In this document: piece after piece, positions 9,993 to 43,439 of the stretch | Layout: the number at the start of each line of letters is the position of its first letter | Position numbering within the stretch: the stretch's first letter is position 1 | From: Perna viridis | Taxonomy: Eukaryota | NCBI GenBank assembly: GCA_037379345.1 | Contig: CM074522.1 | Coordinates: 14,074,001 to 14,138,000, forward strand | DNA length: 64,000 nt | Direction: 5' to 3' | Position numbers and translations under genes: made by a program | Notes under the pieces: generated by a model | What the model saw: only the letters and a program-made list of their open reading frames with translations | Databases searched by the model: none | What the model was told of the DNA's origin: nothing

Positions 9993-10019
9993 TTTCTAGT
10001 AGAGAACTAGGATACATTG

Positions 10020-14879: not shown

Positions 14880-15069
14880 CTTTTACATATGCCTTTCAGC
14901 CAAGTGTCTATGGATTTGAAATGGTACTGTGTGTTGGTAAAACTTTTGGCATTAAACTGATAATTGTCCCAGATTTGAACTTTGCCATTGTTCCATCTGG
15001 CACCGATAGTTTTAGGTCCTTCTCCAAGCCAAATCTCAACATGGGTCATGAAATGCTTTTGGTTTGTAG
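14880..15069 (-). CDS. NlpC/P60-domain protein, coding exon 4 (contains catalytic His: MTHVEIWLGEGPKTIGARW...DTWLKGICK)
   Basis: Acceptor TTTCTTTTCAG|, donor AG|GTTAGT; phase 1 in, phase 2 out; HVEIWLGEG aligns with the canonical HVGIYLG.G; His codon at 15043-15041. Confidence 0.92.
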
Positions 15070-15513
15070 CTGAAAAGAAATCACAGTGAGGTGTAAAAGT
15101 CTTTTTTAAGTGACTCATTTGTAATTTTCTTTGCAATCTTTCCATATTGGAATTTCAATTCTCTAATTTTGCTTCAATTTTCATACCGCTTGACCGGTGT
15201 GGAAAAAAATATTCTCATCACTAGTGACTTTTTTTGTTCTCAGAGTTCGATTGGCTTAGAAATCGATTGTCTTGGACTCAATCTTGAATTGCCTCAAATG
15301 CCATTGTAGTTGATAATTTTGGTGTTTTCTTACCTTAAATAAGAATTATGAAGGGACTCAGGAAGATTTGAAGTGAAAAAATGTTTGAAAGCATCTGGTT
15401 TCTTTTGTTTGGAATGTTTGCATTTGTGTGACGTCAACATGTTTCCTACAAATCGAAATCATAACGTTTTGCATGCTTTTCATTTTTGGGCATTTTTGAG
15501 GCATTAGAGAAAC

Positions 15514-15672
15514 AGAATCTACACTCAAAGCTTTTTGACTATGAATTTCTCACATCTCATGAAATAAATTTTATAGTTTGAATAGCTCGGCAATCCTCGC
15601 GATAAAAACTATAAAATTTATTTCACTTGATGTGAGAAATTCCATAATAAACTCGTTATCGTTGTAGATTCT
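15514..15672. repeat. Foldback (long inverted repeat) element
   Basis: Arms GAATTTCTCACATC...TGAAATAAATTTTATAGTTT (15543-15579) and AAACTATAAAATTTATTTCA...GATGTGAGAAATTC (15606-15642); outer pair AGAATCTACA / TGTAGATTCT. Confidence 0.8.
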
Positions 15673-15701
15673 ATATTTAATGGCTTTAATCAACCAATAA
15701 G

Positions 15702-15784
15702 AACTCAGAACTGGTACCTATCAAATACACCTACCAAGAGTAAACTCAGAACTGGTACCTATCAAATACACCTACTAAGAGTAA
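15702..15784. repeat. Tandem duplication of about 42 bp
   Basis: AACTCAGAACTGGTACCTATCAAATACACCTACYAAGAGTAA occurs twice. Confidence 0.9.
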
Positions 15785-18700
15785 CAGAACAAGATGATAA
15801 AAAAATGTTTAAGAACGTTTGAATATATCTTTAAAGGAGAAAAAAAAGTCCTGACAGACAACATGCCAAAGGGATGAAATACTAGTATCAATATTTCACA
15901 GCCACATTAGTTTTGGTTTTCACTTCCATATAAAGTAAGTTTTATACAGGCAAAAAAGGAATAATTTTATAGAAGTACACTAAAAATGTTTATCTAGATA
16001 AGCTGGATTGTGGAGTCTCACAATTTGAGTGAGACTCATACATTTTGAAGCTGATTTGGTGGGATTTTGTTTTTCTTTGATATTTCATTTTTCGTCTTTG
16101 ATCTATCAAAATTTTACCAAAACATGCATGTCTCATGAAATCTTGTCAGTCCATGATCCATGATATCGTTGAATATTTTATTAAAAACTTGCCCAACCAA
16201 AACCATATCTAGTAAGAGAAGCAGCTGAATCTACCTTACAACAGCTGCAGGACAAATGCATTGTTCTATAGCCATTAAAACAGGTGTCACACACTTAACT
16301 ACAAATTACAAAATGTTATATTCCACAGATGAATGCATTCGACTAAAATTTCATGTATAATGTTGAATTTTTTGTAGTTTTGTACACATATAATTACAAT
16401 TGTATTTGATCAACTACAAAAACGTTGATTGTTCTGAACAATTTAAACTATGAGAACAGGTTAGTAGGATTATGTATCACTTAACAAATGAATATGCTGC
16501 AACAACAAATTTGGAATTAAATTGATTGATATAAGAAGTGCACAAGTAAAACAAAGAGATCCTTGATACTTTAATATCCTTAAATAAGTTATTTGGCAGC
16601 CATTTGGTCTCTTTTATCTAGCATCTTGACTTAAAACTTTTGGCTAAACTTCAGTTGTGCCCTACTCTAAATATGTTTCATAAACTCCAACTTGAGTGCC
16701 TTTCTGCACATATTTCATTCCATCTAGGGGATAAAAATTAATATGGATGTCTAATATCAATAAATCTGAATTAGTTCTATAAAAAATCTTTTATGATGAG
16801 AAATTACTACACCAAGTTTAACTACGATATAGAAATAATATGGTTAACCATATACAATGTATACACCATATAAAACTATCCATCGTAGAAAATAGAAATT
16901 AAAAATCGACCCATCAACCATTAATTCTGTTAAGTTTTTGGTTGTCACAAACATTTTCAATTCCTTGGCCTCAATTTTGGACATCAGAGGATATTCATTT
17001 TCACAAGCCTTATAACCTAATCTAAACCCATATGAAGTAATAACATGACTATTTCAGTCCTTGTTTTAACAAAAATCTTTCACATTTACATCCGGTCATA
17101 TCCCAAAATAAAACTTTTTCCACAATGGTAGGTTGTGAAGTGTGTTGTTTAACAAATGACTACGACCCTGAACCTAAATATAACATTACTATAAATTTCA
17201 GTCTCGAGGACTTAACAGTATTGTACCTAGTACAAAGGTGACTTATTTCAAACTGAGAAAATGGCTGTCCTTACACATGAAAGAAATAACATGAATGCTT
17301 GGTTAAGAATTTAACCTCTTTATACATGCTACCGTTTAATCACAGCTTATTAAAAAGGTATTTTGTTTATTGTTAAATAGTTTTGTTGCTAAACTGCAGT
17401 TGGTTTAAAGTGGCACTTTTACTTCTCAACCAACAGACTATAACTAGAATAATTACACTACAATACTGTAACCAAGTGGAAATACTATTGTCACTATTGA
17501 CTCTTTCAGCCTTCCTTTATAGCTTTTATGAGGCAGAATATTATATTTGTATGCAGTCCTTTCATGATTTCGACTTATCTAGGGTGTTTTATGACAGTCT
17601 GTATTTTTTGCCATATCTTATGAAAATAATATAATTTTGTACATAAAAACCTTAAATTTTGTGACTTTTAACATAGAAATATTGTGAATACCTTAATATA
17701 AGATATTTACAATCCTCAGAGCATTTTTTGTAGTCAAAGTATGTTGAAATTAAGGAGAATCTGTGGAGATAAAACACCTCTGTGATTTATCTCCCTTTTT
17801 CAATACAGTCTCATTCATTCTTGTTAATTTTTTTGAAAATCAGGAATATTACGGAATCCTTGGCAAAAGTAGGAATGATTTCATAACAGAATATAACTAA
17901 AATAATTCAGAGATGCAAATACTACTTCAACCTTCCATCAACATCTCCCCACTCCACCTTAAACAATATGAAATGAACACCATATAGAAGAGAATACTTT
18001 TAAAGAAAAATAAACCCATGAACTAAATCAGTTGGGCATCAATGTACCAGGCATCCAGTTCCATCTATTTTCTACCACACAATTTTATGAATCATTTGTT
18101 CAAAATAACAATACCACTAATTGGAAGAGTAATCAAGGGAACCAAGGTTATAGCGGAAATCAAAAGAATGTAATCCAGGGACAAAGACCAGACATGGAAA
18201 ACAGACAAACACAACAAAGAACATAAAGTAAAATAATACATACAAAGTAACAAAAGTAAACGAACAACTCCGACTCCACTAAAATATTAATTTTAGTTTA
18301 AATATGGATTATTTGGCCCTTTGATGAAGGTCTGAAACAGATATTTTATTCAAAACCTTGCTTCTTACTACAAATAGTAAATTAAAAACAATTTCAAATG
18401 CAAGCTAGTTCCTGATATACATGTATATTTAGTATTCAAATATCAAATGAAGTTGTTCGGTTTACCTGTATGTGAAATTTTTTTTGGACTTTTTATTTCA
18501 TTACAATTATTATTTTTCATCAAACAAGGGTCATTACACTTATTGATTCAAATCTCATTAAACTAGACCCAAGTTTAATGAACCAATGTACAATCCCTTC
18601 AGAATTCCATATAAAGCATTCCCTATTTGCATTTCACATTTTTTCCCAAATAATTCTTCATGACTTTGTCATGGAAACACATCAAAGAATTTTAATTCTG

Positions 18701-19925
18701 AAAAATATATCAATTTTTTCCCTCCCGACTTTATTTAAACTCCTTTCAAGTGGGAGTAACAAAGGATATTGAAACTGTACCCTGAGGTCAAGTGCTTACA
18801 CACTTTCCGTGATTTGGATTCAAAAACTTATATTTACATTTACAATGTACCGGAATATAAATCATTAACATCGATTCTTGCTGAATAATGCAAACACTTC
18901 ATACTGTAGAAGTATCATTACAATCAACATAAACACAGCTAAAACAGTTAGGTACTTTTTTCCCTACTGAACAATTACATCTGAATCATGATATTGTATT
19001 TTTTTTAATTGCAATCAAAAGTTTATTGGAAGAAACCAGACACATTCTAAGTCCTTTCCATGTAAAAGTGCATTAGATAACAATGTAGGAGAAGGGTTGA
19101 AAAACTAGATGGTCTGCCATAGACAAAGAAAGTCATAATGAAAGAGTAGAATGTTCTAGAATGTTCTATTTAGTGGAATTTGTCAGGAAATATGTCAATC
19201 TACCTTATTGTAAAGACCGTGCAGTTTAATTTGCAAATCTTTTTCCCATTTATTACTAATCATGCACTCTTCGATATATATCTTTATGAGGACAAGATGG
19301 GTTATTGGTTGACTGTATTTCAGAGAATTTGCATGAAACCTTCATTCATAAATCACCTTTAGTAACAACTGTGACTTTGACTAAAAATCATAAATCTTTT
19401 TTCCATCATATAAACTCTATTCATTTATGACCATTATAAAATGGGAAAAACTCTACATATCAAACAGAATGAGAAAAGGACAACGTATAATAAGATCCAT
19501 ATTAGCCTCCATGCATGACTGGAAATAAGTTTTTTCTGTTGTTTAGAATGTTTAATGAATGATTTAACATGTTCAACCACATTTATAAGCATATCATCTT
19601 TCAATGATTGAAAATTTCCCAAATTAAGTGTGTTGTTTTTGGCAGATTTTAGGCTTTCATAAAACTGAAAATTCATGAAATTGTGAAAATTTGTAACCTT
19701 ATTTAACAAATTCTATTTAAGTGTATATTTCATTTTTGTCACTTACTTCCAACTTTTTTTTATCTTGAAAAAATCGGGGGCTAAATATGGCCCTTATCAT
19801 ACCTCATCCTCAGTGACAAGAATTTATTCTACACCAACGTATTAGTATTAGACTTTTAGTCAAGATACCTACAACTTTCATGTCACAAGACTCTGTCTTA
19901 ATAACAGAACTTGAAATAAACTTAC

Positions 19926-20129
19926 ATTTAGGGTTTACATATGTGCCTGACATGAAAACAAGGTCTCCAGCTTTCATCTCTTCCTCTTTGATCGTGTGTG
20001 GCAGTGTATCGTACATGTATGCTTGATTCCATGGTCCTATAACAAACCCAAAGTCTTTAGCTAGATCTCGCACAACTTGCCTTACAAGGCCACAGCAGTC
20101 CAAAAATAACTTGGAATGGTACTCTTCAG
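19926..20129 (-). CDS. NlpC/P60-domain protein, coding exon 3 (contains catalytic Cys: LFLDCCGLVRQVV...EMKAGDLVFMSGTY)
   Basis: Long polypyrimidine tract plus TTTCAG| acceptor, T|GTAAGT donor; phase 1/1; DCxG and xGDLVF motifs; Cys codon at 20097-20095. Confidence 0.93.
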
Positions 20130-20732
20130 CTGAAAAAAAAAAGAAAAAAAAACATGACAAGATTGCAGGATGTATTTATCTGCAAAATTGGTTAAGTTTT
20201 CTTTCTTATAACTATCTAAGATTATAAGGTCTCCAGCTATTGTTTTGACAAAGACAAAAACAAATTGGCAATTGTCATAAGCAAAAAAACATTAGATGTT
20301 GACAATGATGTTGCCAGTTAAAAGAAAGCAGAATTTGGAGGTCTTGGCACCACATCTAACTCAAATTTGATGTTTGTAATGATAGTCCTGATCAAAACTG
20401 TACTAATGAGGCTTCCAAGAATGATTTCAATAATTCTAAACTAATTTAATTACTTTAATAAATCTTTCAACAACTTCCAGTAGGCAGAAGATAAATTTGA
20501 TACCCACTTGCATCTGTGTAATTGCATGTAATGCCAAATTGAGGATAACTTACTCATTTCAAATCTTTTCAAGATTGCCAAACAGATAGTTAGGGAATAT
20601 ATCTGGTAGAACTTAAAAGAAAAGGCTACATATAAGACATCATGAAGCTGCCTGATTATTACAGAGACTGGAACAATTATCAAGTTTACATGGCTTTATA
20701 CAAAAATATTCTAGATGTCATGGACGTAGCCA

Positions 20733-20942
20733 TACTGTGAAAGTACTTTAATTCTTGGATACCAATTTTTGTGGATTAGGGAAGAAAACACAAGTTCGTG
20801 GATTCTTGAATTGTGGTTTTGAGGTTTTCACTATACACGTCAATGAAAATTACCTTTTCATTGGGAACCAAATTTCGTGGTTTGGCCTACCCACGAAAAC
20901 CACAAAAATTGGTACCCACTGAACAGTAGTACTTTCACAGTA
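20733..20942. mobile_element. TA-flanked MITE
   Basis: Perfect TIRs TACTGTGAAAGTACT / AGTACTTTCACAGTA. Confidence 0.8.
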
Positions 20943-21771
20943 TTTAACATAAAATCTGTCCCCCTGCTTACATTGTTCTTGTTCCTATTCCAATAGAAAC
21001 CTAACTACTTAACAAATTAGCACTGTTTGTACTTTTATAAAATGTGGACTGAAAATATTTAGTCTTTCAATAATGACAGCATTATAGACAAACACTCCAA
21101 AGAAACAGAAAAAGCAAAAAGCATCAAAGAAATCACCATAAAGAAATTTGTCAACATCAAACAAATAGTGAATTTCTTCTCCAAACTACAAACCCATATT
21201 TAGATAAATACAGTTAATTTTCTATGGTCCTTTTAAAGCATTTTTCAAACTCTTATGATCTGCACTACTTTGTTAATTGCAAAATCATGTAAGATGCCAT
21301 CTACTCAATTTGTAGTGGAAACCCCGTAAGACGAAAAATAATTACGGTCCTTTGAAGTAGTTTTATATCTACAGGCTCACAACCAATCAATAAAGTAACA
21401 TATACAAGATTTCCTGTCCCTTTAATTGAAAATAAAATTAAAAACTTAGAACAGAACTGGATTTTAGAATATGGAATAGGTTTGGTTTTGTATACTCATT
21501 ACAACATTATCACGGACATTTAAGCAAAACACAGATGATAAGTTGATTTAGTTTGGGTGTCCACCTTCCCAACCATACAACCATACACACATACTGGCAA
21601 AAAGACAGTCAATTCAATAAAAATTTGCCTGTTTCAAATTTGTACCAAAGTCTGTCAAAAGATAAACTATTCTAGCCATAGATAACAGTTCTAAAGTATA
21701 GTCTAATATTAATGATGGCTTCCTTGTTTTTGTGGGTATTGTTAAAACAGACTATAAATTGAAGTCAAAAT

Positions 21772-22245
21772 AAACAAGAGGCTCCAAGGAGCCTGGTGAA
21801 AATTTCTTTCAATGTCTTTCAATGGCAATAAAATTAACAAGAAGTAGTCTAACAATTCCAACTCAAGAAGACTTTGGTAGGATTTATCATAAGGACCATC
21901 ACATGGCTTAACAAATTAAAATAAAAATTTGACCACCATCATGCTCAACACTTTAACCCTCTGTCAGAATTTGGCTAAACCTTATGGTTTTGGAGATATA
22001 TGCGAAAAACTATAGTCTGACCCCTATGTTCTATTTCCAGTAACAACAGTCATTTTTTTGATGGATCAAAAAAATAAACACAACTTTTGTGCAAGATACC
22101 CTAAAGAACATATGTGCAAAGTTTCATGTAATTCCGCTCAGAGGAGGAAATTTTTGAAAAATTGTTAACGAACGACGACGACGACGACGACGACGGACAG
22201 CACGTGATGGCAATAGCTCACCTGGCCTTAGGCAAGGTGAGCTAA
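21772..22245 (+). mobile_element. Pearl/CvA-type (Helentron-like) non-autonomous element
   Basis: AACAAGAGGCTCCAAGGAGCCTG start, core repeat, (GAC)n at about 22172-22195, and 3' hairpin AGCTCACCTGGCCTTAGGCAAGGTGAGCT. Confidence 0.7.
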
Positions 22246-22554
22246 GAAGGCAAAATCAATTATGGTAACCCAAAGTTGAAAATTCAAAACCCCTCCCAAG
22301 AAATACTCCACAAAATAATGAAAATGAACCTTTCTTTTGCACCAACTCGCCAAAACTCTTCTCAGTATATATTCAAACAAACTTTAAATTTTCCTTTACC
22401 CAAATTGTTTCAATAATACTTTTACCACTGTAACCTTGGTTCCCTTGATTACTCTTTCAATTTCTTTAATTTTCCTTTTAAAGCATAAGAGGGATACTTA
22501 TGAAGAACTAAACATTAAAATATCTACACCATATAGAGGAAGGTGCATACTTAC

Positions 22555-22705
22555 TGTCTTTTGTCCAATATTTCCTAGCGTATGGAATACCAAAGTACTT
22601 CTTGGCCTGGTTTATAAATTTTCTTCGTAGTTCCTGCTGAAACTTTGGATTTTTCTGTCGTTTTAATCTTGCCTTTCTGACCTTTTTCTGTTTTGCTATT
22701 TCTTT
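22555..22705 (-). CDS. NlpC/P60-domain protein, coding exon 2 (KEIAKQKKVRKARLKRQKNPKFQQELRRKFINQAKKYFGIPYARKYWTKD)
   Basis: Acceptor TTCATTGTAG|, donor A|GTAAGT; 151 nt open frame; AKKYFGIPY matches the N-terminal A..YLG.PY motif of NlpC/P60. Not in the ORF track. Confidence 0.9.
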
Positions 22706-23040
22706 CTACAATGAAATACACAAAACATGCACAGAAAAAGTAAAGTTTGAGTTCAGAATTCAGGTTACATTTATCAGTGAATTTTCAACCCTGTATACTA
22801 ATCCTGCAGAAACTGAAGGGCAAATTTCATAGAGAAAAGAAGATGGGGGACACAAGATTGCCTGTTCAAAGAATTTCTTGTATGCCAATAAGGCTTATTA
22901 AATGCCTTAAATAACACTTAAAACAGCACCAAATTCTTGAAATGCCTTCAGTGTTTCGATGTTAAAAAATACCTTTCGGGAACAAAATCAAATAAACTAA
23001 AAGACAGTTATATTTCAAGGTTAAATATCCAGAAATCTTC

Positions 23041-23258
23041 AATGAGGTAAACCTAGGGTAAGGGACATTACTCATGAAATCAGTGATATGTTTGCATCAT
23101 ATCCAATTTCACCAAAGCCTCTAAAGCTTTCATTTGAAGCAGAATAAAATGAATCCAAGATAATTAGATGCTTACATAAGATTGTTGTAAAATGGTGAAT
23201 ACAAACGTTCCAATGATTTTTAAGAGTTGTGTCCCTTACTCTAGGTCTACCTCCTTAA
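23041..23258. mobile_element. Non-autonomous DNA transposon with TTAA-type ends (Kolobok-like), copy 1
   Basis: TIRs GAGGTARACCTAGGGTAAGGGACA / TGTCCCTTACTCTAGGTCTACCTCCTTAA; a close copy lies at 63397-63618. Confidence 0.8.
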
Positions 23259-29232: not shown

Positions 29233-29448
29233 TGTACCTCAAAAAGGCAGATCCAGGATTTCAGGTAAAAGGCTTTGTACCTCAAAAAGGCAGATCCAGG
29301 ATTTCAGGTTAAAGGTTGTGTACCTCAAAAAGGCAGATCCAGGATTTCAGGTAAAAGGTTGTGTACCTCAAAAAGGCAAATCCAGGATTTCAGGTTAAAG
29401 GTTGTGTACCTCAAAAAGGCAGATCCAGGATTTCAGGTAAAAGGCTGT
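29233..29448. repeat. 43-bp tandem repeat, 5 copies
   Basis: Unit TGTACCTCAAAAAGGCAGATCCAGGATTTCAGGTAAAAGGTTG. Confidence 0.95.
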
Positions 29449-32034
29449 GTTAATTTAAGAGAAGAAAAGTATATTTGTGAGGAGAAAATCTGAAAATCAA
29501 ATGAAAAGATAATGAGTTCTGATCCAGAAATAAGAAAGGGAGTACTGTAAATTGTTCTAATTAGCATACTAGGATAGGTTCAGGAAGGTCCTAATTTGGC
29601 CCTAAATCTCAACTGTTACATAGTCACTAAAATCTGTTGCTAGGCTAGTCATAATTAAGACTTCATATTTTAAGAAACAAATTATAAAAGGCAATAGTAC
29701 ACAATGTGGAAGTGATTGACCAAAACATGGACTGGCTTTCTGGAAATCTTAATTCATGACAATTTTCGGAAGTTTTCAAGTACAAATCCTTTTCAACAAC
29801 ATTGGCCGTGTCTGTCGACCAAATAAATTTTGTGATAGCTACATGTATTTGACTTGGACCCACTAGATTAGAAAATTGTTATAATGGTCAAGGCATACAG
29901 CCATTGTCATTTTTAGCAAAGACCAACCTAAAAATGGTCAAAAATTTGCACAAAACTTACATTTGTTCATTTTGCTACGTCACTAAGGTCACAATACCCT
30001 TAATTTTAATGCATTCCCATGAAATCCAATTATCATTGTTAAAAACTGGATGCTTAAGGACATATATTGATCATATTAAATTAAGTCTAATTTCAATACT
30101 ATGAAATTTCATGCATATATCATGGTTGATATTGGGCTTTAGTGAACTTACTCCTTTGGCAGAAATATAACAAAACTGGGCAAAAATGAAGAAGGTTTCC
30201 AATCCCCAAAATCATCCTCTTGGATTCACAACTAATATTGATACTCACAAGTAACTAAAGAGAATGCTAAATTTTAACAGCGAAGTAATTTCATGTTACA
30301 TTCACTCCATTTCAGTTTATAACTGAAGTTCATTAAAGCTGGAAATGTCTAAAACACTGTCATTGTGTAATGAATGATGGTGAAAAGCCAAGGACACTAA
30401 TTGTAGATTTCTTTACCATTAAAAAGCAACTTTGATGGCTTGATTGCTCCAATATTTTTTTTTTTAATTCTTCAGAAGTAAATATTAGAAAATACAAGCT
30501 GGTATCCAAGACCATATTTTTGTTTGATATTTTCTATATATGTTCAACTAAATTTCATCCAAAAGTTTGACAGCCAAGCTCAAATTATAGTAACCATGGG
30601 CTACTGGTCAACTGCTAATTTTTATCCCTGTTCTTCATTCAACTCATCTTGGAATAATTCCCACCAGATCTTTCTCACTGGGTAACAACAATTGGAAAGG
30701 CCAAAACACTAAAAATTCTTGTCATAGAATAAAAACCATGCCATGATGGAGTATTACATTGTGAAGGAGAAAACCATAAAGTGATGCCCTAAATGAAACT
30801 TTCCCTTAGTCTTCTGATTAACTAAAAAGAAGTGTACCAATAATAAAACCAAGTTCTTGCATGTCATGGCCATATGTACAACAACAAAGATATTACCTTC
30901 AAACACATGATTCAACATTACATGAATATTTTATACAATGAAGTTCTCGTTTTGTAATATCAACTGAAGTTCAATAGTCTGCCTATAACAAAGCTCCCAG
31001 AAATACCAAGTGCCAAATATAGGACTTATAAAACATTCATACAAACCATCCAAAGACAGTGTACAGTTTCCTTCAGCAGCTATTGATTTTTCAAGTGTCA
31101 ATTTAATTTTAATGACTAACATCAGGGATTTTCTAACATTTTTTAAAATATAATTTGGGTTTTTTGGCCAAATGGTTCGGATTCAATAATGATAAATATT
31201 AAATTCTTTGGAAAGATCCTATTATTTGTTGAACTGTTTTTCATTAACATTCATTTTTTGATAGGATTTAATGTTATGGTGGTAACATTTTTTTAATTGA
31301 CCGAACACCTCCATTTGGTTTGTACTATGAAGATTTGAAATTACTCACCAAAAAGTCATGGGTTTCCAAAATGTGATTTTTGTGGAAACAAGCAAAGGGA
31401 AACATGTAAATGCATTTGGACTTAGAATGCAATTTAAGCACTGACAGTCAAAACGCATCAACCATTAATTTTCAGGTGATACACTGTCATTGATCAAAGC
31501 TTTTTGTTATGACATCACAAATCTGACATTGTTTAAAAGCTGCCAGTGATGTCCCTTGCTTTCAAACAAACTTGTTTTTTTCTGACTTTAAGCATTTTTT
31601 CCAGTCTAAAGACATAAACAGTGCAATGACTTAGCAAAAACTGTGTATGTACAGCAATGCTTGGGTACAGACTAATATTTTCCTGAATTTTAATATGGTT
31701 TTATGTCAATACTATGCATTGCTATTGTTTCGGTGCCTTGGTTCTTTAATCTTACTCAATATTCACTTGACAATGAACCTCATTGTGGTGGAGAGTAAGT
31801 TTTCCTTGGCAGTAGAAATTCAACAATGTCCCTTTCTAGGCTTGTTGCCGTGGTCCTTTATTACAGAACTTTCATAGTCATTGTATTTACTGACATTTTT
31901 CTTTGTCTACATCATTACAACAGAAAACGTAAGGTACTAACTTTGAGGAATACATAACATCATAGTTAACAACTGGCAAAATGACTATATAGACATTGCA
32001 TTGTTACTTTGTGCCTTATACATCAGAAGAGATT

Positions 32035-33928: not shown

Positions 33929-35044
33929 CTGAGCAATAAGTAATAATATACTCCCTGTTCATATCTGATATCCTCCAGTAGTTGACCAGACTTGCTGTCA
34001 GTGATTACATGTACATGTAACTAACACTCAACTCATAAATTACCCTTGCATCTAACAATCACCCTTGCCCACTTACAGTATACATGCACTACAGGTGTTT
34101 TACTCAACCAATTTAGTTCTTGTCTTTTCTCTCCAATTTTGTCAAATTTTATCACCCAACTCTCTTGATTATAAAATCTCTGTATTCTACATTTGATCAA
34201 TTTTTGTGTTGTTTCTTTCAAAAAGAAAATAGTTTACCTCAGAACTTCTGTACCTAAGAACTAGAAGATGGCTGAACCAATCCAATTCATGTACAGTGGA
34301 TCATTCAATAAATTTGGTGAAACTTCTTCACATAATTGATAAAAAAAATACAGTTTTATAATCATTTCTCAACAGACTCCTAATATATCTGCACAAGGAT
34401 ATTCAAGCACAAAGGTAACTGAAGTTGTAGAATACCTGAACAAGATCACTTCAAATAAAAAGCAAAGGATGGACAACTGTATAGCATGAGCAGGTGAGAA
34501 ACGATAAAAATTTGTAGATCATTTCTTTAGCAGTAAGGAGAAATACCATGACCATACTATAACAAGTCATCAACTAACCCATATAATGACAAACCTGCAT
34601 GTAAATAGCGTAACAGCTGTCACCACCTCTTTTAAAACCTTAACACTACCTCATCTACAATCTGTATAATGCCTGCAGCCTATAAATGTTCATGTGACAC
34701 ACCAAAGACCTAAAGGCTCCAGTTGGATGTCCTGCTGCACGACAGCAATACAGAGATAAATACATTTTATGGAGAGAAACCAGAGGAAAACAAGACAAAG
34801 AGACTGATACCATCAGTATAAGTCATCAGTCTAGTCAGAAAAAGATCAATATTGAACCAATACAAAGGAACTTAAAAAAAAAACATCTAAAATTTAGATA
34901 AAAGACTGGAAACACAATGATCATGACTTGCATTTGCCAATAATGACTCAAACATTCTAAGTGACAAATGATAAAGATATAACACTGAAGAAGTAACTGC
35001 TAAAATGTTGCTGTTCTTTCAAAATGATTCATAAAAAAAATATT

Positions 35045-35385
35045 GATGATCACTGGTTTGGTCAGATTTTGGGAATCTTCTGGTTTTATCAATTTCATGA
35101 CATAAATATTTTTACCCAAAGACCCCCACTTTTCTACTCATAATTTCATAAACACACCTTAAAATGTTACTTGAGAAGTTTTTATGACATCTTTGTTATC
35201 TCCTCAGAGTTATTAATAGATAAAACCTACTAAGACAAAACCTATAGAAAATCCAGAAAAATCCTTTTCCCGCCAAAATTCAAATGCCTTTATCTCAATA
35301 ACAAGTTACTATGCTTTTTCTTCTTTTCATATTGTTCTAGCATAAAAGATCTTAATAAAATCCTTGTTATTTTTAAACATCCTTA
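35045..35385 (-). mobile_element. Degenerate dispersed repeat (MITE-like), inverted copy of 32035-32425
   Basis: Reverse-complement similarity to 32035-32425; ends in AACATCCTTAA. Confidence 0.55.
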
Positions 35386-35430
35386 AATCTGCATATCGGA
35401 ACCTAGAGCCCCATTCTACGACTAGTACAA

Positions 35431-35432
<2 letters not shown>

Positions 35433-35465
<33 letters not shown>
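35433..35465. repeat. (CA)n microsatellite
   Basis: Uninterrupted CA run. Confidence 0.95.
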
Positions 35466-38400
35466 TTTTTTAAACAAAACCCTTCAGCCCTAAGTTTCTG
35501 TTTTAGCCAATAGCATTTTACATTACCTTTTTCATCATTTTCTGTGTCCCATTATCATAATCCTATAATTAACAAAAAGATAAATTGCATTTTCTTTGTA
35601 CCTCTGGTCACCAGTACATAGTAACTCAGAAGTTAGGTTTAAACCAGTTTAATTCACATTCTAAATTGAAGTTTTTTTCCCTACAGAAGTAAATGCCTTC
35701 TCCTGTTCCAAAGTTCAAAGAGGTATAACTCCCACAAAATTCAGTGGATCATAAATTCCTGGAAATATGCACAACTACATACCATGTCTTCATTACAAAC
35801 AAAGTTTCATGAAATCTATGCAACAGTTTCTGAGAAGATGTACTTACAAAAAAGGGATGGGCAGACAGATGGTCAGGACAAAAACAATACATGTATGTCT
35901 CCCCACTAAAGTGAAGGGAGGCAAAATTGCATTCCCCCCATAAATCACATTTATTATTGCCTTTTAGGTGGCATGAGATTAGTACAATACTACTCAGTTA
36001 CAGTTTAGTTTCGAAACATTTCATTACATGTATTTTTTACTTCCACAAGGTTACAGTATTGCTGGAAGAGTGACATACATTACAGAGCTGTGGTAAATAA
36101 TATAATCTTTCATACCTAACTTGCAAATGAGTACACTGAAACAGGAAAAATAAACAGCTACACTTTAAAAGAAGTCTCACAACTCTGTGAAGAAAAAAAT
36201 CAGAAAAAAATTAAAGAGACTTTGAGTTATCATATAAAGTATGAAAAGAGGTAAACAATTACAGGTACACCCAATACATGTAATATGCGTGTCTGCAGAT
36301 GAGTGTATATAAATTATGCAAAATTTTCTTTCAAAAATGTTGCCAAAACCTCAACTAAAATTATTTTACCCATTTCATAATCAAGCTACACCCACTAATA
36401 TTACAAAATACTGTCAGGTAAAGATGAATACTTGGAATAGCAACATACTGATGATAAACCACAAAGCTGACCTACCATAGCCTACTCATCTAGCCAGAAC
36501 AAGTATCAGCTTGCATAGAAAACCACCTCAGATCAGAACTGACTCTCAACACAGTTCAATTTCCTATAAAGATCATTAGAAAGCATTTAATTGAAAAACC
36601 TACAAAAGTTTGTCACATTTATTCTTGAACTTTCAAAGATTTTGAAAGTGCAAATAGGCCAGGATGGAAAAAAATAACTTTAAAGGAAAGATTAACACCT
36701 CTTTAAGATATATATCAAGCCCCAAATCAATGCATTACAAGTGACATCAAAGACACACCTTGAGGCTGACAAAAGTAAGAGACTGTTTATGATAAGGTCT
36801 TCCAGAAGTAAGTGTTATTCATTTATCACCACTAAATTTTAGGTGATATAAGGTACATGTACGTCCAATATAGCAAAATAAAACAGAGTTAACAAAAAAG
36901 AAAACTGTCAGACACACCTAAAAGGCTAATTTGATGAAAAAATCTAAATTCAGTAATCATTATTTACTCAGAATAAAAAATGAGGTTTAGACAAGGATTT
37001 TCAATGTGATACATGTACATTCTATGCCCTATTATTTTTTTATGTATTAAGGGTTTGTCTATCCCCCCTTTTTTCATGTTTTAAATAATTATTTCTGCTA
37101 CACCAAGCCAAGCAAATAATATAACACTAAATTTGTCAAAAACAATATTTTTTTTAAACCTACAACTTAGCATAGAAACAAGAAACCAAAAATTATAGTT
37201 TATGTGAATTTTTTAACAATGGTTGAATCTTTCATATCCATGACATTTGTCAGGATTTTTGTCACCAATCCTTCATGAAATCACTCTATTCAATCAAGTA
37301 AGAATGTGAGGACATGTACCCCAGATCATGTCTAACTGAGGTAATTATCTCCCCTTTTAATCCAGTATTAAAAGGAAACCAGTCAGAGATATTATCATGT
37401 CATAATAATTAACCCTCAAACTTCAAGGACAACAATTGTAAAAATTCTTTTAACAGCATAAGGTTAAACAGTACTAAGGCCAGAGTTTAGTAGATTTTAC
37501 ACATGGTTAGGGAAATATAAAGACCCCCTGTCAGAAACTGATCATCAAATTAATTTGGACCCCACTCAATATGACATGATTTTAAATAAATAAGTGGGTA
37601 CTTAGTGACAAAAGACTTTTATAAGCATGAACATTTTATCAAGACTTTGTCCTGATCACCTAGCAGGAAAAGAATGTATTTGTAAATCATTTTAAAGAAT
37701 AGAGATTTTTTGTTGTAAAATAGAATTTTGAAAAAGAAGATGCTATTAATGTGTTGAAAGAAGACTTTAAATTTTCCTGAGCCAAACTTTAAAAAAAAAA
37801 AGAAATTTTTATCCACCATTTAGAAGTTGGGGCCGAACTAATTGTTTTTAGTAACAATTGTTATTGGACCCCTGCCAAGCTTATTCTTTCAGGAAGGTGT
37901 AAGCTACAGGACAGATTAGGTAAAAAACAAAATGAGAAAAGTTTTTTTCTGCTCAAGACCGTTCATTAAACTGCTGCTATGGAATATATAATGATTGATA
38001 CCAACAATACCGAACCAAATGTAAAACTAGGACAAAAGGAAAAACATTGAGCAGCATCTTTAAAACTAGACATACAAGATGGATTTTACATAAAACAATA
38101 CATCAACAGAACTAAAAAAACAGTAGGAATTATTATATGAAGGACTCTGGTACAAATGAAACATACAAAGATAACACATCCACAGTGCAAACTTAGAAAT
38201 TTTCTCGGCCAAAATTAAGATTCTACAATTAGTGCAAGAAATAACAGATCAGATTCATTTCATCAACAATTAACCATTTCACAACATAATAATGCCTGTT
38301 AACCAAGCCATCTCTTCTACCATAGTTACAGGTACATAACTCTCAGACCTTTGAGTAATTCAATTGTGCTAGTGCTGAATCAACTTATTGGCTCCCTCAC

Positions 38401-41400
38401 TCTCCAAATAATTCAATTCTCTCTGGTGACAATGCAGACAGTTCTGGAGATAGGATACATGTACCTGGTACTCAATAACACAGGAATGTACAATGTATCA
38501 CCTCTTTACAGAACAGCACATGGTATAAAATGATGGCAGTTATTTTCAATCCCAATCCACCACACACAAAGAATTTCAACAATAGTTTGACTGTTATTTG
38601 TAAAAGAATAAATTTGGAGTCTAAAGCATACAGGTATCTCATTCATCAACTAATATTCTCATTACTGAAAACTGAAAACAAAACTAAGAATAAATGAGTT
38701 TTTTTTTGTTTTTTTTTTTGTTACTAGAGAAAAAGGAGGACAAAGGTTCTTAGAAACAGTCAAACAGAACAAGATTTTTTTCTTTGAAAAAGGGACTACA
38801 ATTCAGTATAGAAGTATTCAGATTCTCTTAACTCTTGAACAAGCAACATGACTTTCTTTTTTTTTTTCAGATACATGATCAATGGTTAACACCCAGCCTA
38901 ACGATCTCACCACCTTCACACTTGCTTGCAATGTTTCTTTCCATCTCTTCTACTCTCATTAACTTACCTTTACAAACAAAACATGTTGTTGATTTCCAAT
39001 CCACAAAAATTATGAAAATAATACATCTAAATCTGGTGCAATAAGTAAATAAAAATCTACAGAACAAGCGTCTCTGGTTTCTGAATAATTTTTTATTTTG
39101 ACATTGATGACCGTATGGTCCTGTCGACATCTTTACCTGACAGTATTAAAACTTATTATAATCTAATGCTGTTAGGTAAGATGTAGCCAGAAACCACATT
39201 AATACATGTCAAATTCCACATCCAAAATGGCTCCAGAGAGTTCGTAGATGTGCAGTGGTGCAGGGTGAATCATGTCCAGTAAAAGCAATAAGCAGAGTAG
39301 ATGAATTAGTTCCATGCAGGTTCATATCAAAACTTAGTAGCCATTGTAACAACATAAATGTTTGAAACAGTTACTATGAAACTTGTCACATTATTAACAC
39401 TTCGTCATCACTGGCCCGTGTAAAGTGTTTCAATATTTGATGCGTAACATATTATAATTTCACACATATTTCTTGATCCCTTTTAAAATATTAAATTGAT
39501 CTTTCAATAATTATAATATTCTCAAATACTAACCAGGAACTAAGTCAATTTAATGTCTGACCTTATCCAAGCGAGTCAAATCCTAAAATGAAACTTCAAA
39601 TAGAATTAAAAAAAAAAACAGGTGTGGCAGTTAATCACATCACATCAAAGTTTCATAAATTACACATGATACATGTAATCATCAGTATAAAATAACCAGT
39701 TTTCTCTTCCTTAATAATCAGCAAGAATACAACAAAAACCGATCACATTTACAACATCCTGCAGTTTACATCACATAAATGCAGAATTTGCAGACCATGT
39801 TCCCACGTTACAAAATGGAAGTTCCAATATATCAGTCGATAAAGACAACACTATCGGACAAAGACATATAATGGATCATCATTTTCCTATCCAATCACTA
39901 CATTTCAATAAAAGTTGTCATAATTTGGTTTAAATTATTCTGGTATCATACAGCAGTGCACAAAGCATATGCATTCCAACTAACACTTTTCAATAGACAG
40001 TTTTATATACCTACAAACTGTAGACATTTCTTCACTGATTATGCCCAATAGGTGAAAAATGTTGATGCGCTGACAAACGTATCTTTATCAGATTTAGCTA
40101 TAAGGCAAGCAACATTAATATCAAACACTCATTTTTACTAGGAGGCATGCCACGTTGTTCGTAAAAGCTATTCGTCTGTGACACAGCTCATTCCATATGT
40201 TTAATCACCCCACATCACGGAACAAAGAACAACGTTTCAAGTCTTTGTGATAATTCAACCACGCCTTCAAATACCCGATATTTTCCTAAGGTAAAAACTT
40301 TCAAATGATCACATCTTATCTCAATTAAAGGTGACCCCAGGTACATAAGACCATGCTATAAATTCTGTACCTGTTCACAAACTGTTTTACTCAGTTCTGC
40401 TCAAAGGCTTTACCAGGTTATGTATTAAACAACAAGGTAAACTATGGAATATAACTGGTTGATCCATTGGAAGCCATAAGAACTTGTGTCAATACAAACA
40501 ATTTTGAGTTGCTATGATAGGCCGTTATTAGAACTGGGCTGGATGAATGGCACATGAAGGACAAAAATATCACTTTTATCATGCAACCCCCGGGCAGATA
40601 TAACACATTGTACTGATAGTTATTAAATGAGGTCTAAAATGTTCATTCTCAAAACTGTTGAAAGTACAGAGTGTTGAGAATCATTAATACACATATGTGT
40701 ATGTTCAAAACATCCATTAACAAAGACCTTAACTAGGAGGATTTTTTTATACTTATAACAGTGATTTTAATAACCTTTAAATTTTTCTGTTGCAATTTTC
40801 TATATTTTTTTTTACAATAAAACTCCAGTCAAACTGTCTATGTTTAAATTTAGATTATATCATAAACATGTTAAAATTTTCTGTTTACATGCACAGGAAA
40901 AAAGGTACTCTTATATCTTAAACTTTAAAGAGAGAAAAAATTTAAATGCCACCTTTAAAAAGTAAAAAAATATTTAAATAACAACCAAAAATGAAAATAA
41001 ATACATATTTGTTTTAACCAAGAAATTATACTACAAATATTCTTGCTTTATATTTTTTTCTAAGTTAACATTTTCACAGTAACCCTACCCATTCTTTTTT
41101 AAAGATAAAAAAACATTTCATCCTTTTATACTTATTCAAGTAAATAAAATTGAATAAGTCATGTCTAACATGTTTCATATTTTTTTTTATTAAACCCATT
41201 CTTTGATCTTTAAAACAACCAACATTGTTATATAGGTTCATTTGTACATTCTACCAGAAACAATATTCTAACAAAAAAAAACGTCTGACTTACACCCCCA
41301 TGTCTCCATAACTTTGATTGCAACCAAATGTCCACATAATTAGCATTATTCATAACTACTTCCTCAAACCAAGTAATAATCTAATGATAGCCATGTATGC

Positions 41401-43298
41401 CTTCAATCTCTTTTACTACAAAATGTATGTCCAGACAAAATCTCTCATAATATAACCACAAATGAAAATCTTACGATGTGAGTGTTTTGTCAACTAATTG
41501 TCCAGTCAGAAAAAAGACTGACCTTTAACCCTCCAGAAAATTACCTTTTTCAAGCCCAAATGGCAAATAGTAGTTCATTAACTGACACAAAGTCAGTAAA
41601 TGAACTACTATGAAAACTTCTTTGAAGAAATTGGAAATGGTTCAAATGACCACCAGCCAATATAATGAAGTTCATTTTAAACAACTCAACTTTGATTAAA
41701 TCATAATGGAACACTTGTGAATTTTTAAACTGAATTTCTCTATTTCATTCTAATCTTGATTACCTGTTGACATTTCAACCATGTCAAGTAATATCCACAT
41801 TATGGCATACAAAGGGGGATAACTCAGTTTAATAAATCAAAATTCTGTGAAATTAAAATGATATACTATACATGTAGAAAAACAACATATTTAAATTTGG
41901 TACTGCATAATTTTAATTGTAATACATGTAATTAACCTTAATTCATCATATTATGAATCAGATGTATAGTGTTTATCTTTTAGACATACATGTAGCATTA
42001 GTAATTTACTCATTAAGTACATGTACAATTAGTTTACAATAAGCAAGGTTTAAAATCATTAAAAGCAATTATGCATACTCATTCACTTTTTTAGAAAACA
42101 TGAAATATCCTACTGTTCCTGCACATGTACATGTAGAAACTTGAAACTGAGTTAAGATTAATTGACCTAAACCTTGAGGAAATTTACTTAAAATAAATGT
42201 TCATTTTTTTTTTTTCAAATTACTTAAAACGATGACTTTAAAATCTTACTGCAAGTACAAGTACATAAATAGATATTCACTGGCATTCCTTTATACAGGT
42301 AAATTCCTCTGTTCTACATAACATGTAATTGACTGAACTGATCAATATAGTTACCAATTTGTTACTAGGATAATATACATTCCCTGGTTGTTAATTTGTA
42401 CTCTAAGAATAATTTTATCCCTTTTCAAAACAGTGTTGTAAACAGACCCCAGTCTGTGTGGACATATGGGATTACAGTAATTCACTATGATGTAACATTT
42501 GGTCAACATCTTATCTGTTCAATGGACAAATTAAAAACTTTTTATTGATCAGTGATAACAAAGGTTATGTCATAAAGAGTACCAGGTCATAAACAGGTGT
42601 CTATTCACACCTTGAAACAAGTATAATGTAGAGTTAATTTAACATGTTCCTTAAATGGCAATAAACACTTGAAGTCCTGTAAAGTACTTCACAAGTTAGT
42701 CACCTACATGTACATTGTAGCTTCATGTAGAATGTAAACAAAAATCTTATCCATAATTACTATGTGGGAATTCTACTGAACATGTATAAATGTCCAATCC
42801 TGTTACACAACAGTTTATAGATCTATGTGCATGTAATTACAAAATATACATAACGACACAGTTTTTGTCAAATAATTAATAACATATACATACATGTATG
42901 TAGATACTTTAATTACAACTAGTCTTAAGTTTCAGCAGGATACAATGAATTTGTATTATTTATAACATTTGGTCAGACATTAAAATCCATCTAAATGTAA
43001 GCAACATAACAGGCTGCATCTAATGCATTCAATCACAACTTAGACTATACTAGAAGTTATGTTTAAGTTAGAAGTTGAAGGAGTTCCATGTATATTGCTA
43101 TTGAACATGTACATTGCATGTCATCATCAGGGGCTGCAATTAATAAAAGAGAATAAATGGAATTTAAACAACCATTTTAAACGTATGCAATGCATATAAT
43201 GATATTTATCATAATTTGATGCAAGTCAAGTCATGAAGGATTACTATAAAAAAAAAACGGTTATTCGTAAAGGAAAGGAATGAATGTATATTTCCTAC

Positions 43299-43439
43299 CT
43301 GTCTTGCCTTTTTAAATTTTATGAAAGACTCTTGAAGATTTGACTTGCATCCGTCTCCAAAGTCAATGGTAAATGCTTCTTTCTTTTTCTTTGTCACATG
43401 TGCGTTCTGTTTGTTAGTATCAATGACATTGTCTGCCAT
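43299..43439 (-). CDS. NlpC/P60-domain protein, coding exon 1 (MADNVIDTNKQNAHVTKKKKEAFTIDFGDGCKSNLQESFIKFKKARQ)
   Basis: ATG at 43439 next to a CpG-rich promoter; 141 nt (47 codons); donor CAG|GTAGGA, phase 0, matching the phase-0 acceptor of exon 2 across a 20.6 kb intron. Confidence 0.75.

What the first reader, a model, noticed from the sequence alone, without database searches (positions are those of the whole stretch)
14880..43439. Intron-containing NlpC/P60 cysteine peptidase gene in an animal genome, hidden from the ORF track
Seen: four GT-AG exons over 28.5 kb join in phase (0, 1, 1) into at least 228 aa carrying AKKYFGIPY, LDCCGLV, KAGDLVF and THVEIWLGEG in the canonical, non-permuted order (Tyr89, Cys109, His175). 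Established: this order defines bacterial and phage NlpC/P60 gamma-D-glutamyl peptidoglycan endopeptidases, whereas the well-known animal members (LRAT/HRASLS) are circularly permuted, with His before Cys. Inference: this is a poorly characterised, catalytically competent eukaryotic family. It has no signal peptide, so it is probably intracellular and not a secreted antibacterial enzyme.
Basis: partly seen in the sequence, partly recalled or inferred. Interest (0 to 1): 0.85.

Follow-up and report, generated by a model that had tools for sequence, protein, structure and literature searches.

The report
NlpC/P60 peptidase module of TTLL10
A real, expressed bivalve gene encodes a bacterial-style cysteine peptidase domain that in most other eukaryotes forms the front half of the tubulin polyglycylase TTLL10, which makes it a testable candidate for the still unidentified enzyme that removes glycine chains from tubulin.

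Summary
Four minus-strand GT-AG exons (43439-43299, 22705-22555, 20129-19926, 15069-14880) join in phases 0, 1, 1. They carry the NlpC/P60 motifs in the order Cys before His. RNA reads and transcript contigs join exons 3 and 4 exactly as predicted. The model is incomplete: a fifth, stop-bearing exon lies about 0.8 kb outside the window, and a 36-nt in-frame micro-exon (35562-35527) is a candidate.

The gene belongs to a eukaryote-wide, vertically inherited family found in animals, choanoflagellates, an ichthyosporean, ciliates, a jakobid and hemimastigotes. Cys, His and the Glu of HVE are invariant in 233 of 233 domains. No true prokaryotic member was found.

In about 100 proteins from sponges to crocodiles and ciliates this domain is the N-terminus of TTLL10, the tubulin polyglycylase. 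In this genome the TTLL10 ligase exons lie 26 kb downstream on the same strand. A mir-8/200 gene sits in intron 1, and mouse miR-200b/a/429 is hosted by Ttll10.

No paper in the searchable library links NlpC/P60 to TTLL10. Papers from 2024 and 2025 state that no tubulin deglycylase is known.

My best reading, inferred and not shown, is a cytosolic glycine side-chain amidase paired with TTLL10, like the amidase-ligase pair in trypanothione synthetase.

The scan holds one other first-reader note on this same stretch and none on other DNA.

The parts
43299..43439 (-). Exon 1: start codon and 47 codons, hydrophilic, with no signal-peptide-like stretch. It ends in phase 0.
   Evidence: Read. It aligns to residues 1-49 of the Mytilus edulis protein P0002 and was found again in the whole genome.
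39123..39188 (-). mir-8/mir-200 precursor inside intron 1, on the same strand as the gene. It is an associated feature, not coding.
   Evidence: Rfam RF00241 at 60.7 bits against a cut-off of 47. The sequence was read. Mouse miR-200b/a/429 has Ttll10 as its host gene (PMC5356520).
35527..35562 (-). Candidate 36-nt cassette micro-exon (12 codons, phase 0 to 0). Not confirmed by RNA.
   Evidence: It matches 10 of 12 residues of P0002 residues 103-114, which lie directly before the E2 part. The AG acceptor and GT donor were read. It was not seen in other molluscs.
22555..22705 (-). Exon 2: a basic stretch (19 K/R in 50 residues) and the G-I-P-Y motif (Tyr89). It ends in phase 1.
19926..20129 (-). 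Exon 3: the catalytic Cys109 in LDCCGLV, the family-specific WNQAY..DTLP motif, and GDLVF. It ends in phase 1.
   Evidence: Pfam PF00877 at 23.7 bits. Homologues at up to 88% identity. RNA joint to E4.
14880..15069 (-). Exon 4: His175 in HVEIWLG, then TIGAR, where the canonical third His is Gly. It ends in phase 2 at a GTTAGT donor.
   Evidence: (the contigs leave the exon exactly at 14880).
1..14879 (-). The part of intron 4 that lies inside the window. Exon 5 (244 codons, a Cys/His-rich motif, then an acidic tail and the stop) lies 762-1497 bases beyond the window's first base, at G000:C12:14072504-14073239. The TTLL10 ligase exons follow at G000:C12:14033546-14046843, on the same strand.
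   Evidence: for exon 5. Searches show the contig running 1158 nt past E4 and ending 14 nt after an ATTAAA. Searches place the TTL exons.

Best explanation
Shown: this is a single-copy, spliced, expressed gene for a cytosolic NlpC/P60-fold protein with the residue order Cys before His. It is the stand-alone form of a module that in most eukaryotic lineages is the N-terminal domain of the tubulin polyglycylase TTLL10. Here the two halves sit in tandem on one strand, and the peptidase half has its own stop codon and its own polyadenylated mRNA.

Inferred: the module is a thiol amidase that works on the product of its ligase partner. It would trim or remove glycine side chains that TTLL3/8 and TTLL10 build on gamma-carboxyls of glutamates in tubulin tails, and possibly on other TTLL10 substrates. 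Cys109 would attack the Gly-Gly or gamma-Glu-Gly amide, and His175 would act as the general base. The invariant Glu of HVE may stand in for the lost third His. The basic N-terminal stretch would hold the acidic tubulin tail. The acidic tail of exon 5 may mask the enzyme. The ancestral TTLL10 would then have been a writer-eraser pair, built like trypanothione or glutathionylspermidine synthetase-amidase, which joins a papain-like amidase to an ATP-grasp ligase.

My odds are about 0.95 for gene and family identity, about 0.9 for the TTLL10 link, about 0.65 for a catalytic role in the TTLL10 pathway, and about 0.4 for deglycylation itself.
For: Gene: exons and phases, RNA joint and contigs, single copy, and a polyA-signal-like ATTAAA at the contig end.

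Fold: an AF2 model of the orthologue P0047 has pLDDT 94-98 over residues 51-220. VIA-align gives Z 12-13 and rmsd 2.4-3.1 A over 113-125 residues to SagA, LytE, DPP VI and RipA/B. Foldseek gives probability 1.0. hhalign to E. coli MepS gives probability 90% with Cys and His in register.

Selection: Cys, His and the Glu of HVE are present in 233 of 233 domains.

TTLL10 link:
- 15 of 17 long hits carry Pfam TTL C-terminal to the domain.
- 97 of 102 proteins found with the axolotl N-domain carry TTL. They include RefSeq models from many phyla and independent transcript assemblies of protists.
- NCBI names them TTLL10.
- The axolotl TTL domain is 62-65% identical to mammalian, bird and fish TTLL10.
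- In this genome the orthologous TTL exons lie 26 kb downstream on the same strand, colinear with fused proteins of other bivalves, a snail and Lingula.
- mir-8/200 in intron 1 matches the mouse Ttll10 host relation.

Chemistry (established knowledge): NlpC/P60 enzymes cut gamma-glutamyl and cross-bridge amides.

Precedent: the Leishmania trypanothione synthetase-amidase structure (PMC2427367).

Open niche: deglycylases are called 'unidentified' (PMC11244163), and the enzyme that removes glycine chains 'has yet to be identified' (PMC12340829).
Against: There is no biochemical evidence; the function rests on fusion, synteny and chemistry by analogy. The canonical third catalytic His is Gly, so the mechanism, or even hydrolysis as such, may differ. 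TTLL10 of mammals, birds, frogs and most teleosts lacks the domain, and recombinant Xenopus TTLL10 works without it (PMC12340829), so the domain is not needed for ligation and cannot be a universal eraser. In Salpingoeca, Monosiga, Adineta and Ciona the stand-alone gene has no TTL neighbour within 10 kb. I could not measure the Cys-His distance, because the tools return no coordinates, and the model is of an orthologue, not of the window's own protein. The acidic tail is strong here but only moderate family-wide.
Confidence: 0.5

Rival explanations
1. It is a peptidase for a different acidic-tail modification or substrate. It could be a deglutamylase that clears gamma-linked glutamate branches so that glycylases can use the same sites, or an amidase acting on another TTLL10 substrate such as NAP1.
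For: The evidence is the same fusion and synteny. The classical NlpC/P60 bond is gamma-glutamyl (established knowledge). TTLL10 activity depends on the glutamylation state of tubulin (PMC12340829). Stand-alone genes not linked to TTL exist.
Against: Deglutamylation is already covered by the CCP and TMCP families (PMC11244163). Every fused partner named by its source is a TTLL10-type ligase and not a glutamylase clade, although I built no full TTLL tree.
Confidence: 0.2
2. It is not a hydrolase in vivo. The Cys-His module would act as an acyl or peptidyl transferase, with LRAT-like chemistry, or as a regulatory or substrate-docking module for TTLL10.
For: The third triad residue is lost. NlpC/P60 relatives include acyltransferases (LRAT/PLAAT; PMC10318531). 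RipD is a non-catalytic NlpC/P60 fold and scores as high as the enzymes.
Against: Cys, His and Glu are invariant in 233 of 233 members, in fused and stand-alone proteins alike, which argues for catalysis. A docking role would not explain genes that live apart from TTLL10.
Confidence: 0.12
3. It is a recently transferred bacterial peptidoglycan hydrolase used as an antibacterial effector, as with tick Dae2 or the Trichomonas NlpC enzymes.
For: The fold and residue order are those of bacterial cell-wall endopeptidases.
Against: The gene has five or six exons with introns of 2-21 kb and no signal peptide. The domain tree follows eukaryote taxonomy. The best solved bacterial relative reaches only 24 bits. 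A scan of 185,579 prokaryotic species genomes for the family's signature peptides gave a single locus, and that locus uses the ciliate code at 21-31% GC; it is a mislabelled MAG contig.
Confidence: 0.03
4. It is a pseudogene, or a chance assembly of ORF fragments.
For: None beyond the marginal Pfam score of a single exon.
Against: There are spliced reads in two RNA runs and contigs in two more. Identity to a mytilid orthologue is 65-88% per exon. All invariant family residues are present.
Confidence: 0.01

Closest known systems
Bacterial NlpC/P60 (MEROPS C40, Pfam PF00877) D,L-endopeptidases: E. coli MepS/Spr, Bacteroides DPP VI (YkfC-like), E. faecium SagA, B. subtilis LytE
   Same: It has the same papain-like fold, the same order (Cys on the N-terminal helix, His on a later strand), the D-C-x-G and H-V-x-I motifs, and a G-x-P-Y motif before the Cys.
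   Different: It is cytosolic and intron-bearing, and the family is found only in eukaryotes. The third catalytic His is replaced by Gly, and an invariant Glu follows the His. It has extra invariant motifs (WNQAY..DTLP, GAR, and a C-x-S-x-C-x-x-H-x-W tail). Sequence similarity to solved bacterial enzymes is only about 24 bits. No peptidoglycan substrate exists in its compartment.
Trypanothione synthetase-amidase and E. coli glutathionylspermidine synthetase/amidase
   Same: An N-terminal papain-like Cys-His amidase is joined to a C-terminal ATP-grasp C:N ligase, so one protein makes and breaks the same amide. A C-terminal segment regulates the amidase site (PMC2427367). TTL enzymes are ATP-grasp ligases; Pfam ATP-grasp models co-hit them.
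   Different: The amidase there is of the CHAP family and the ligase is not a TTL. The substrates are small molecules. In this genome the two halves are separate genes. This is an analogy of design, not shown homology of the fusion.
TTLL10 (tubulin/protein polyglycylase, elongase)
   Same: The family is the N-terminal domain of TTLL10 in about 100 proteins from sponges to reptiles and ciliates. Here it is the upstream tandem neighbour of the TTLL10 ligase exons and shares the mir-8/200 host relation.
   Different: The TTLL10 proteins studied so far (mouse, human, Xenopus) lack this domain. The window's gene ends with its own stop and 3' UTR.
Animal LRAT / PLAAT (HRASLS) proteins
   Same: They belong to the NlpC/P60 superfamily, use a Cys-His active site and are intracellular (PMC10318531).
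   Different: They are circularly permuted, with His before Cys, and they are lipid acyltransferases or phospholipases. The window's protein is not permuted.
Known erasers of tubulin side chains: CCP and TMCP deglutamylases; Giardia metallopeptidase deglycylases of 14-3-3 (the latter from my own knowledge and from titles listed, not read)
   Same: The proposed role is the same kind: removal of amino-acid side chains from acidic tails.
   Different: Those are zinc metallopeptidases. This would be a thiol amidase, and no activity has been shown for it.

Membership tests
NlpC/P60 superfamily, canonical (non-permuted) branch, Pfam PF00877 | Profile match at or above the curated cut-off | tested here: met
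   E3 alone scores 23.7 bits against a cut-off of 23, E 4.9e-5. This is marginal: full-length relatives score 19.7-23.6 bits. The joined protein was not scanned, by rule.
NlpC/P60 superfamily, canonical (non-permuted) branch, Pfam PF00877 | Papain-like alpha+beta fold with the Cys on a helix N-terminus and the His on a beta-strand | tested here: met
   This was tested on the orthologue P0047, not on the window's own protein. AF2 pLDDT is 94-98 over the domain. Z is 12-13 with rmsd 2.4-3.1 A, covering whole catalytic domains of SagA, LytE and DPP VI.
NlpC/P60 superfamily, canonical (non-permuted) branch, Pfam PF00877 | Order Cys before His (not circularly permuted) | tested here: met
   The Cys is in E3 and the His in E4, further downstream on the coding strand. 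Both are in register with MepS.
NlpC/P60 superfamily, canonical (non-permuted) branch, Pfam PF00877 | Third catalytic residue (His in the CHH triad of MepS and DPP VI; PMC10318531) | tested here: not met
   hhalign puts the third His of MepS opposite the Gly of the T-I-G-A-R motif. That Gly is nearly invariant in the family. The protein is therefore filed as a divergent branch, not a typical member.
NlpC/P60 superfamily, canonical (non-permuted) branch, Pfam PF00877 | Cys and His side chains within catalytic distance | not testable with these tools
   Structure prediction returns no coordinates. Adjacency is inferred only from superposition on solved enzymes.
Eukaryotic TTLL10-associated NlpC/P60 clade (defined here) | Signature motifs LDCCGLVR, WNQAY..DTLP, HVEIWLG, TIGARW, SIDTWL and C..H.W | tested here: met
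   HMM alignment of the four exon translations, each on its own, against 233 family domains shows all invariant residues present.
Eukaryotic TTLL10-associated NlpC/P60 clade (defined here) | Fusion to, or tandem linkage with, a TTLL10-type TTL ligase | tested here: met
   The TTL exons lie 26 kb downstream on the same strand, colinear with fused orthologues. Whether a fused mRNA also exists in this species was not tested.
LRAT / PLAAT family | Circular permutation with His before Cys | tested here: not met
   The order is Cys109 then His175.
Horizontally acquired antibacterial amidases (Dae2/Tae2-like, Trichomonas NlpC) | Secretion signal and close bacterial sister sequences | tested here: not met
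   E1 is hydrophilic. No true prokaryotic relative was found in the scan of species genomes. The tree follows eukaryote taxonomy.
Bifunctional amidase / ATP-grasp ligase enzymes (GspS, TryS) | CHAP-type amidase and glutathionylspermidine-type synthetase on one chain | tested here: not met
   The amidase here is NlpC/P60-type and the ligase is TTL-type. The resemblance is one of architecture only.

The most novel reading that the evidence does not exclude
This family is the long-sought tubulin (protein) deglycylase. The ancestral eukaryotic TTLL10 would then have been a bifunctional writer-eraser of polyglycine side chains. Its eraser half was split off in some lineages, such as this bivalve, and lost in mammals, birds and frogs. 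That would explain why searches in the usual model systems never found it.
Probability: 0.35. Interest if true: 0.95.

Novelty: new variant of a known kind. Interest (0 to 1): 0.8.

Why it matters
Glycylation is the one major tubulin-tail modification for which no removing enzyme is known. Papers from 2024 and 2025 say so outright. A conserved Cys-His amidase domain welded to the polyglycylase in lineages from ciliates to reptiles is the kind of lead that makes the question testable on the bench with existing antibodies and mass spectrometry. It also shows that the textbook TTLL10 of mouse, human and Xenopus is a truncated form of an older two-enzyme protein. It explains the odd, deeply conserved position of the miR-8/miR-200 gene at the TTLL10 locus. 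And it gives a clean example of a non-permuted NlpC/P60 enzyme working inside eukaryotic cells with no peptidoglycan in sight. Even if the substrate proves to be another one, the fusion and its repeated fission and loss are new comparative facts, at least for the searchable literature: no paper there holds both terms.

Tried and rejected
- Pfam and NCBIfam on E1, E2 and E4 alone gave nothing meaningful.
- A motif search for the fifth exon inside the window found nothing. The exon lies outside the window.
- Searching PF00877 over the whole genome found nothing, because the domain is split by introns. This says nothing about other copies. The protein search shows a single copy.
- The one 'bacterial' relative, a Desulfobacterium MAG contig, was rejected as a ciliate sequence. 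Stops stand where Gln is conserved, GC is 21-31%, and there are no long ORFs.
- The PDB holds no TTLL10 structure, so the ligase type could not be settled by structure. It was settled by 62-65% identity to named TTLL10 of mammals, birds and fish.
- I looked for TTL neighbours of stand-alone genes in four compact genomes and found none within 10 kb.
- The exon-5 acidic tract as a family hallmark is only partly supported: the median is 9 D/E in the best 30 residues, and 17% of members reach 12 or more.
- The micro-exon was not seen in other molluscs.
It was redone from references.
- By rule, the exons were never joined for any search or fold. The structure is that of the orthologue P0047, and the joined-protein HMM scan and fold are left out.
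- I did not use the second fold job on a fused protein, because without coordinates the domain packing could not be read.

Full report
**1. The observation**

The gene lies on the minus strand. Reading the sequence gives these exons:
- E1 43439..43299: ATG, 47 codons, donor GT.
- E2 22705..22555: acceptor AG, donor GTAAGT.
- E3 20129..19926: acceptor after a long T run, donor GTAAGT.
- E4 15069..14880: donor GTTAGT.

The phases are 0, 1, 1. Counting codons gives Tyr89, Cys109, His175 and 228 residues, as stated. The window has no N runs.

E3 alone passes the Pfam NLPC_P60 cut-off, 23.7 against 23 bits. In a scan of 1.84 billion representatives it finds 422 proteins, 278 of them at E<=1e-10. 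The best named match is a Mytilus edulis protein. It aligns to all four exons in order, at 65-84% identity, so the genome is that of a mytilid-like bivalve. It has 723 Mb in 46 contigs, and the window is G000:C12:14074001-14138000.

**2. RNA evidence**

On window:14600-20400 the joint 15069->19926 skips 4856 bases. Its ends are CT..AC on the plus strand, which is GT..AG on the coding strand.
- Two raw RNA-seq runs from different studies show it in 10 reads (8 starts) and 5 reads (5 starts). All have the first mate on plus, as expected for a minus-strand mRNA in a stranded library.
- Two older runs each hold one transcript contig with the same joint, of 1606 and 2014 nt.
- Both contigs leave E4 exactly at 14880, so the GTTAGT donor is used and the short read-through ORF is not the end of the protein.

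Depth is low, about 4-8 in a fifth of each run. Only this one stretch could be laid, because the cap is one call of at most 6,000 letters. The E1-E2 and E2-E3 joints therefore rest on splice signals and homology.

**3. Corrections to the model**

The Mytilus protein continues after E4 with a Cys/His-rich motif that is absent from the window. A search of the whole genome places it at G000:C12:14072624-14073244, just outside the window.

The exon starts after a TTCTTCAG acceptor at L003:2116 and runs 244 codons to a stop at L003:1381-1383. The 2014-nt contig extends 1158 nt beyond E4. That is the length of this exon plus about 420 nt of 3' UTR, and it ends 14 nt after an ATTAAA. The gene therefore makes a stand-alone, apparently polyadenylated mRNA of about 2 kb and a protein of about 473 residues.

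Exon 5 is very acidic, with 34 D/E in its best 50 residues. E2 is very basic, with 19 K/R in 50.

A 36-nt stretch at 35562..35527 has AG and GT borders and phase 0-0. It matches the 12 residues that precede the E2 part in the Mytilus model. It is a candidate cassette exon, not confirmed by reads and not seen in other molluscs. The gene is single-copy.

**4. The family**

A full-length relative (P0047) finds 348 proteins at E<=1e-5. Named sources include:
- Animals: amphioxus, oysters, limpet and snails, rotifers, a flatworm, tunicates, turtles, geckos, snakes, coelacanth, sturgeon and a sponge.
- Protists: choanoflagellates, the ciliates Blepharisma and Ichthyophthirius, the jakobid Andalucia and a hemimastigote.

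An HMM alignment of 233 domains shows the catalytic Cys, the His and the Glu two residues after it in 233 of 233. The window's exons, aligned one by one, carry every invariant residue.

A tree of 64 named domains follows taxonomy, with vertebrates at 100, pteriomorph bivalves at 96 and heterodont bivalves at 99.

A scan of one genome for each of 185,579 prokaryotic species for the family's signature peptides returned one locus. It has stops where Gln is conserved, 21-31% GC and no long ORFs. It is a ciliate contig mislabelled as a Desulfobacterium MAG.

The family is therefore old, eukaryotic and vertically inherited. It is not a recent transfer.

**5. Fold and active site**

Instead I folded the orthologue P0047 with an alignment of 67 stand-alone members.
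- pLDDT is 94-98 over residues 51-220.
- Foldseek's significant hits are all canonical NlpC/P60 cell-wall peptidases.
- VIA-align gives Z 12-13 with rmsd 2.4-3.1 A over 113-125 residues, covering the whole catalytic domains of SagA, LytE, DPP VI and RipA/B.
- By sequence the nearest solved protein is Bacteroides DPP VI, at only 24 bits.
- A profile comparison with E. coli MepS (probability 90%) aligns the Cys and the His. It puts the third triad His of MepS opposite the Gly of the family's T-I-G-A-R motif.

NlpC/P60 enzymes normally use a Cys-His-His triad (PMC10318531), so this branch has a remodelled site. The invariant Glu of HVE is the obvious candidate to replace the third residue, but that is an inference.

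**6. The link to TTLL10**

- Every long hit that I scanned, except two, has the NlpC/P60 domain at the N-terminus and a Pfam TTL ligase domain at the C-terminus: 15 of 17.
- Their sources name them TTLL10, in Biomphalaria, Ambystoma and Pogona with many isoforms. Relatives occur in Tubulanus, Lampetra, Owenia, Heptranchias and Acanthaster.
- Searching with the N-domain of axolotl TTLL10 finds 102 long proteins, 97 of them with TTL. They come from crocodile, turtles, lizards, snakes, caecilians, salamanders, coelacanth, sturgeon, bichir, tarpon, sharks, hemichordate, echinoderms, cnidarians, sponges, Lingula, heterodont bivalves, abalone, nemerteans and a chiton.
- The same search also finds transcript assemblies of a choanoflagellate, an ichthyosporean, Protocruzia and others, and Tetrahymena. 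Two isoforms of one choanoflagellate transcript share 405 residues that reach into the ligase.
- The axolotl ligase domain is 62-65% identical to TTLL10 of mammals, birds, frogs and teleosts. Those proteins are 574-810 residues long and did not appear in the N-domain search. The partner is therefore true TTLL10, and those lineages have lost the module.
- In this genome the orthologous ligase exons lie at G000:C12:14033546-14046843 on the same strand, about 26 kb after the stop of exon 5. Fused proteins of Mercenaria, Dreissena, Candidula and Lingula map colinearly over E2, E3, E4, the start of exon 5 and then the ligase exons.
- All five named pteriomorph bivalves have stand-alone models. A gene fission in that lineage, with the neighbours kept in tandem, is the simplest reading.
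- I could not test whether a read-through isoform also exists here.
- Elsewhere the stand-alone gene has moved away from any TTL gene, in Salpingoeca, Monosiga, Adineta and Ciona. The module can therefore work in trans.

**7. An independent trace of the old locus**

Rfam finds a mir-8/mir-200 precursor at 39123-39188 on the coding strand, inside intron 1. In the mouse the miR-200b/a/429 cluster has Ttll10 as its host gene (PMC5356520). The microRNA thus marks the 5' part of the TTLL10 locus in both a bivalve and a mammal, although the mammal has lost the peptidase exons.

**8. Mechanism**

What is shown is a conserved, expressed Cys-His domain of the NlpC/P60 fold, in the cytosol and tied to the polyglycylase by fusion and synteny. 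What follows is inference.
- NlpC/P60 and CHAP enzymes hydrolyse gamma-glutamyl and glycine-bridge amides (established knowledge).
- TTLL10 lengthens glycine chains that start on gamma-carboxyls of tail glutamates.
- One well-studied enzyme class, trypanothione and glutathionylspermidine synthetase-amidase, joins a papain-like amidase to an ATP-grasp ligase so that one protein makes and breaks the same amide. Its C-terminus gates the amidase site (PMC2427367).
- By that logic the module should trim or remove glycine side chains.

[quoted passage not shown] No paper in the library holds NlpC together with TTLL10, with tubulin tyrosine ligase or with glycylation. The two papers that hold TTLL10 and P60 are unrelated by title.

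Against the idea:
- There is no assay.
- The third His is lost.
- The module is absent from mammals, birds and frogs.
- Ligase activity is seen without the module in the Xenopus construct, residues 105-570.

I put deglycylation at about 0.4. A deglutamylase or another tail-directed peptidase gets about 0.2, a non-hydrolytic role about 0.12, and the antibacterial or artefact readings get a few per cent together.

**9. Verdict**

I rate it a new variant of a known kind, with interest 0.8.

Another first-reader note on this same stretch (s1-765261) proposed a remodelled active site and a tubulin side-chain isopeptidase. My tests agree with both points, but they do not prove the second.

Noticed in passing
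window 39123-39188 (-): A mir-8/mir-200 precursor (Rfam 60.7 bits) lies in intron 1 of the peptidase gene, on the coding strand. Mouse miR-200b/a/429 is hosted by Ttll10, so the microRNA-TTLL10 linkage looks as old as bilaterians.
   Followed up: partly
window 18122-18231 (intron 3): A short A-rich element shows very high RNA depth on both strands: hundreds in raw reads and above 100,000 summed over contigs. It has many 'goes back' joints and loose ends. It is a highly expressed dispersed or tandem repeat family, not part of the gene. Rfam gives no match.
   Followed up: no
L014 (CAXXVR010000009.1, 1629987-1636682): A 1.7-Mb contig filed as an uncultured Desulfobacterium MAG carries a member of this eukaryotic family. 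It has in-frame stops at conserved Gln positions, short introns and 21-31% GC, so it looks like a ciliate sequence misfiled in a bacterial bin.
   Followed up: partly
window 5093-6054: A tandem array of a 75-nt unit (about 13 copies, 88-96% alike) gives a spurious 132-aa repeat ORF on the minus strand. Further arrays lie at 10149-10531 (58 nt), 29233-29450 (43 nt) and 52672-53843 (46 nt, 25 copies).
   Followed up: no
window 56791-57267 (-): The longest ORF of the window has 158 aa and starts Met-Gly in a Ser/Lys-rich stretch. It has no Pfam match and may be an exon or a small gene upstream of the peptidase gene.
   Followed up: partly
window 15182-15763 (intron 3): Low RNA cover on both strands with several fixed differences from the window. 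These are probably reads from other copies of a repeat.
   Followed up: no
P0043 / P0151 and other reptile 'uncharacterized protein' models: Short stand-alone models in turtles, geckos and snakes coexist with fused TTLL10 models of about 1,000-1,100 aa in related species. Some stand-alone entries may therefore be partial gene models and not true fissions.
   Followed up: no
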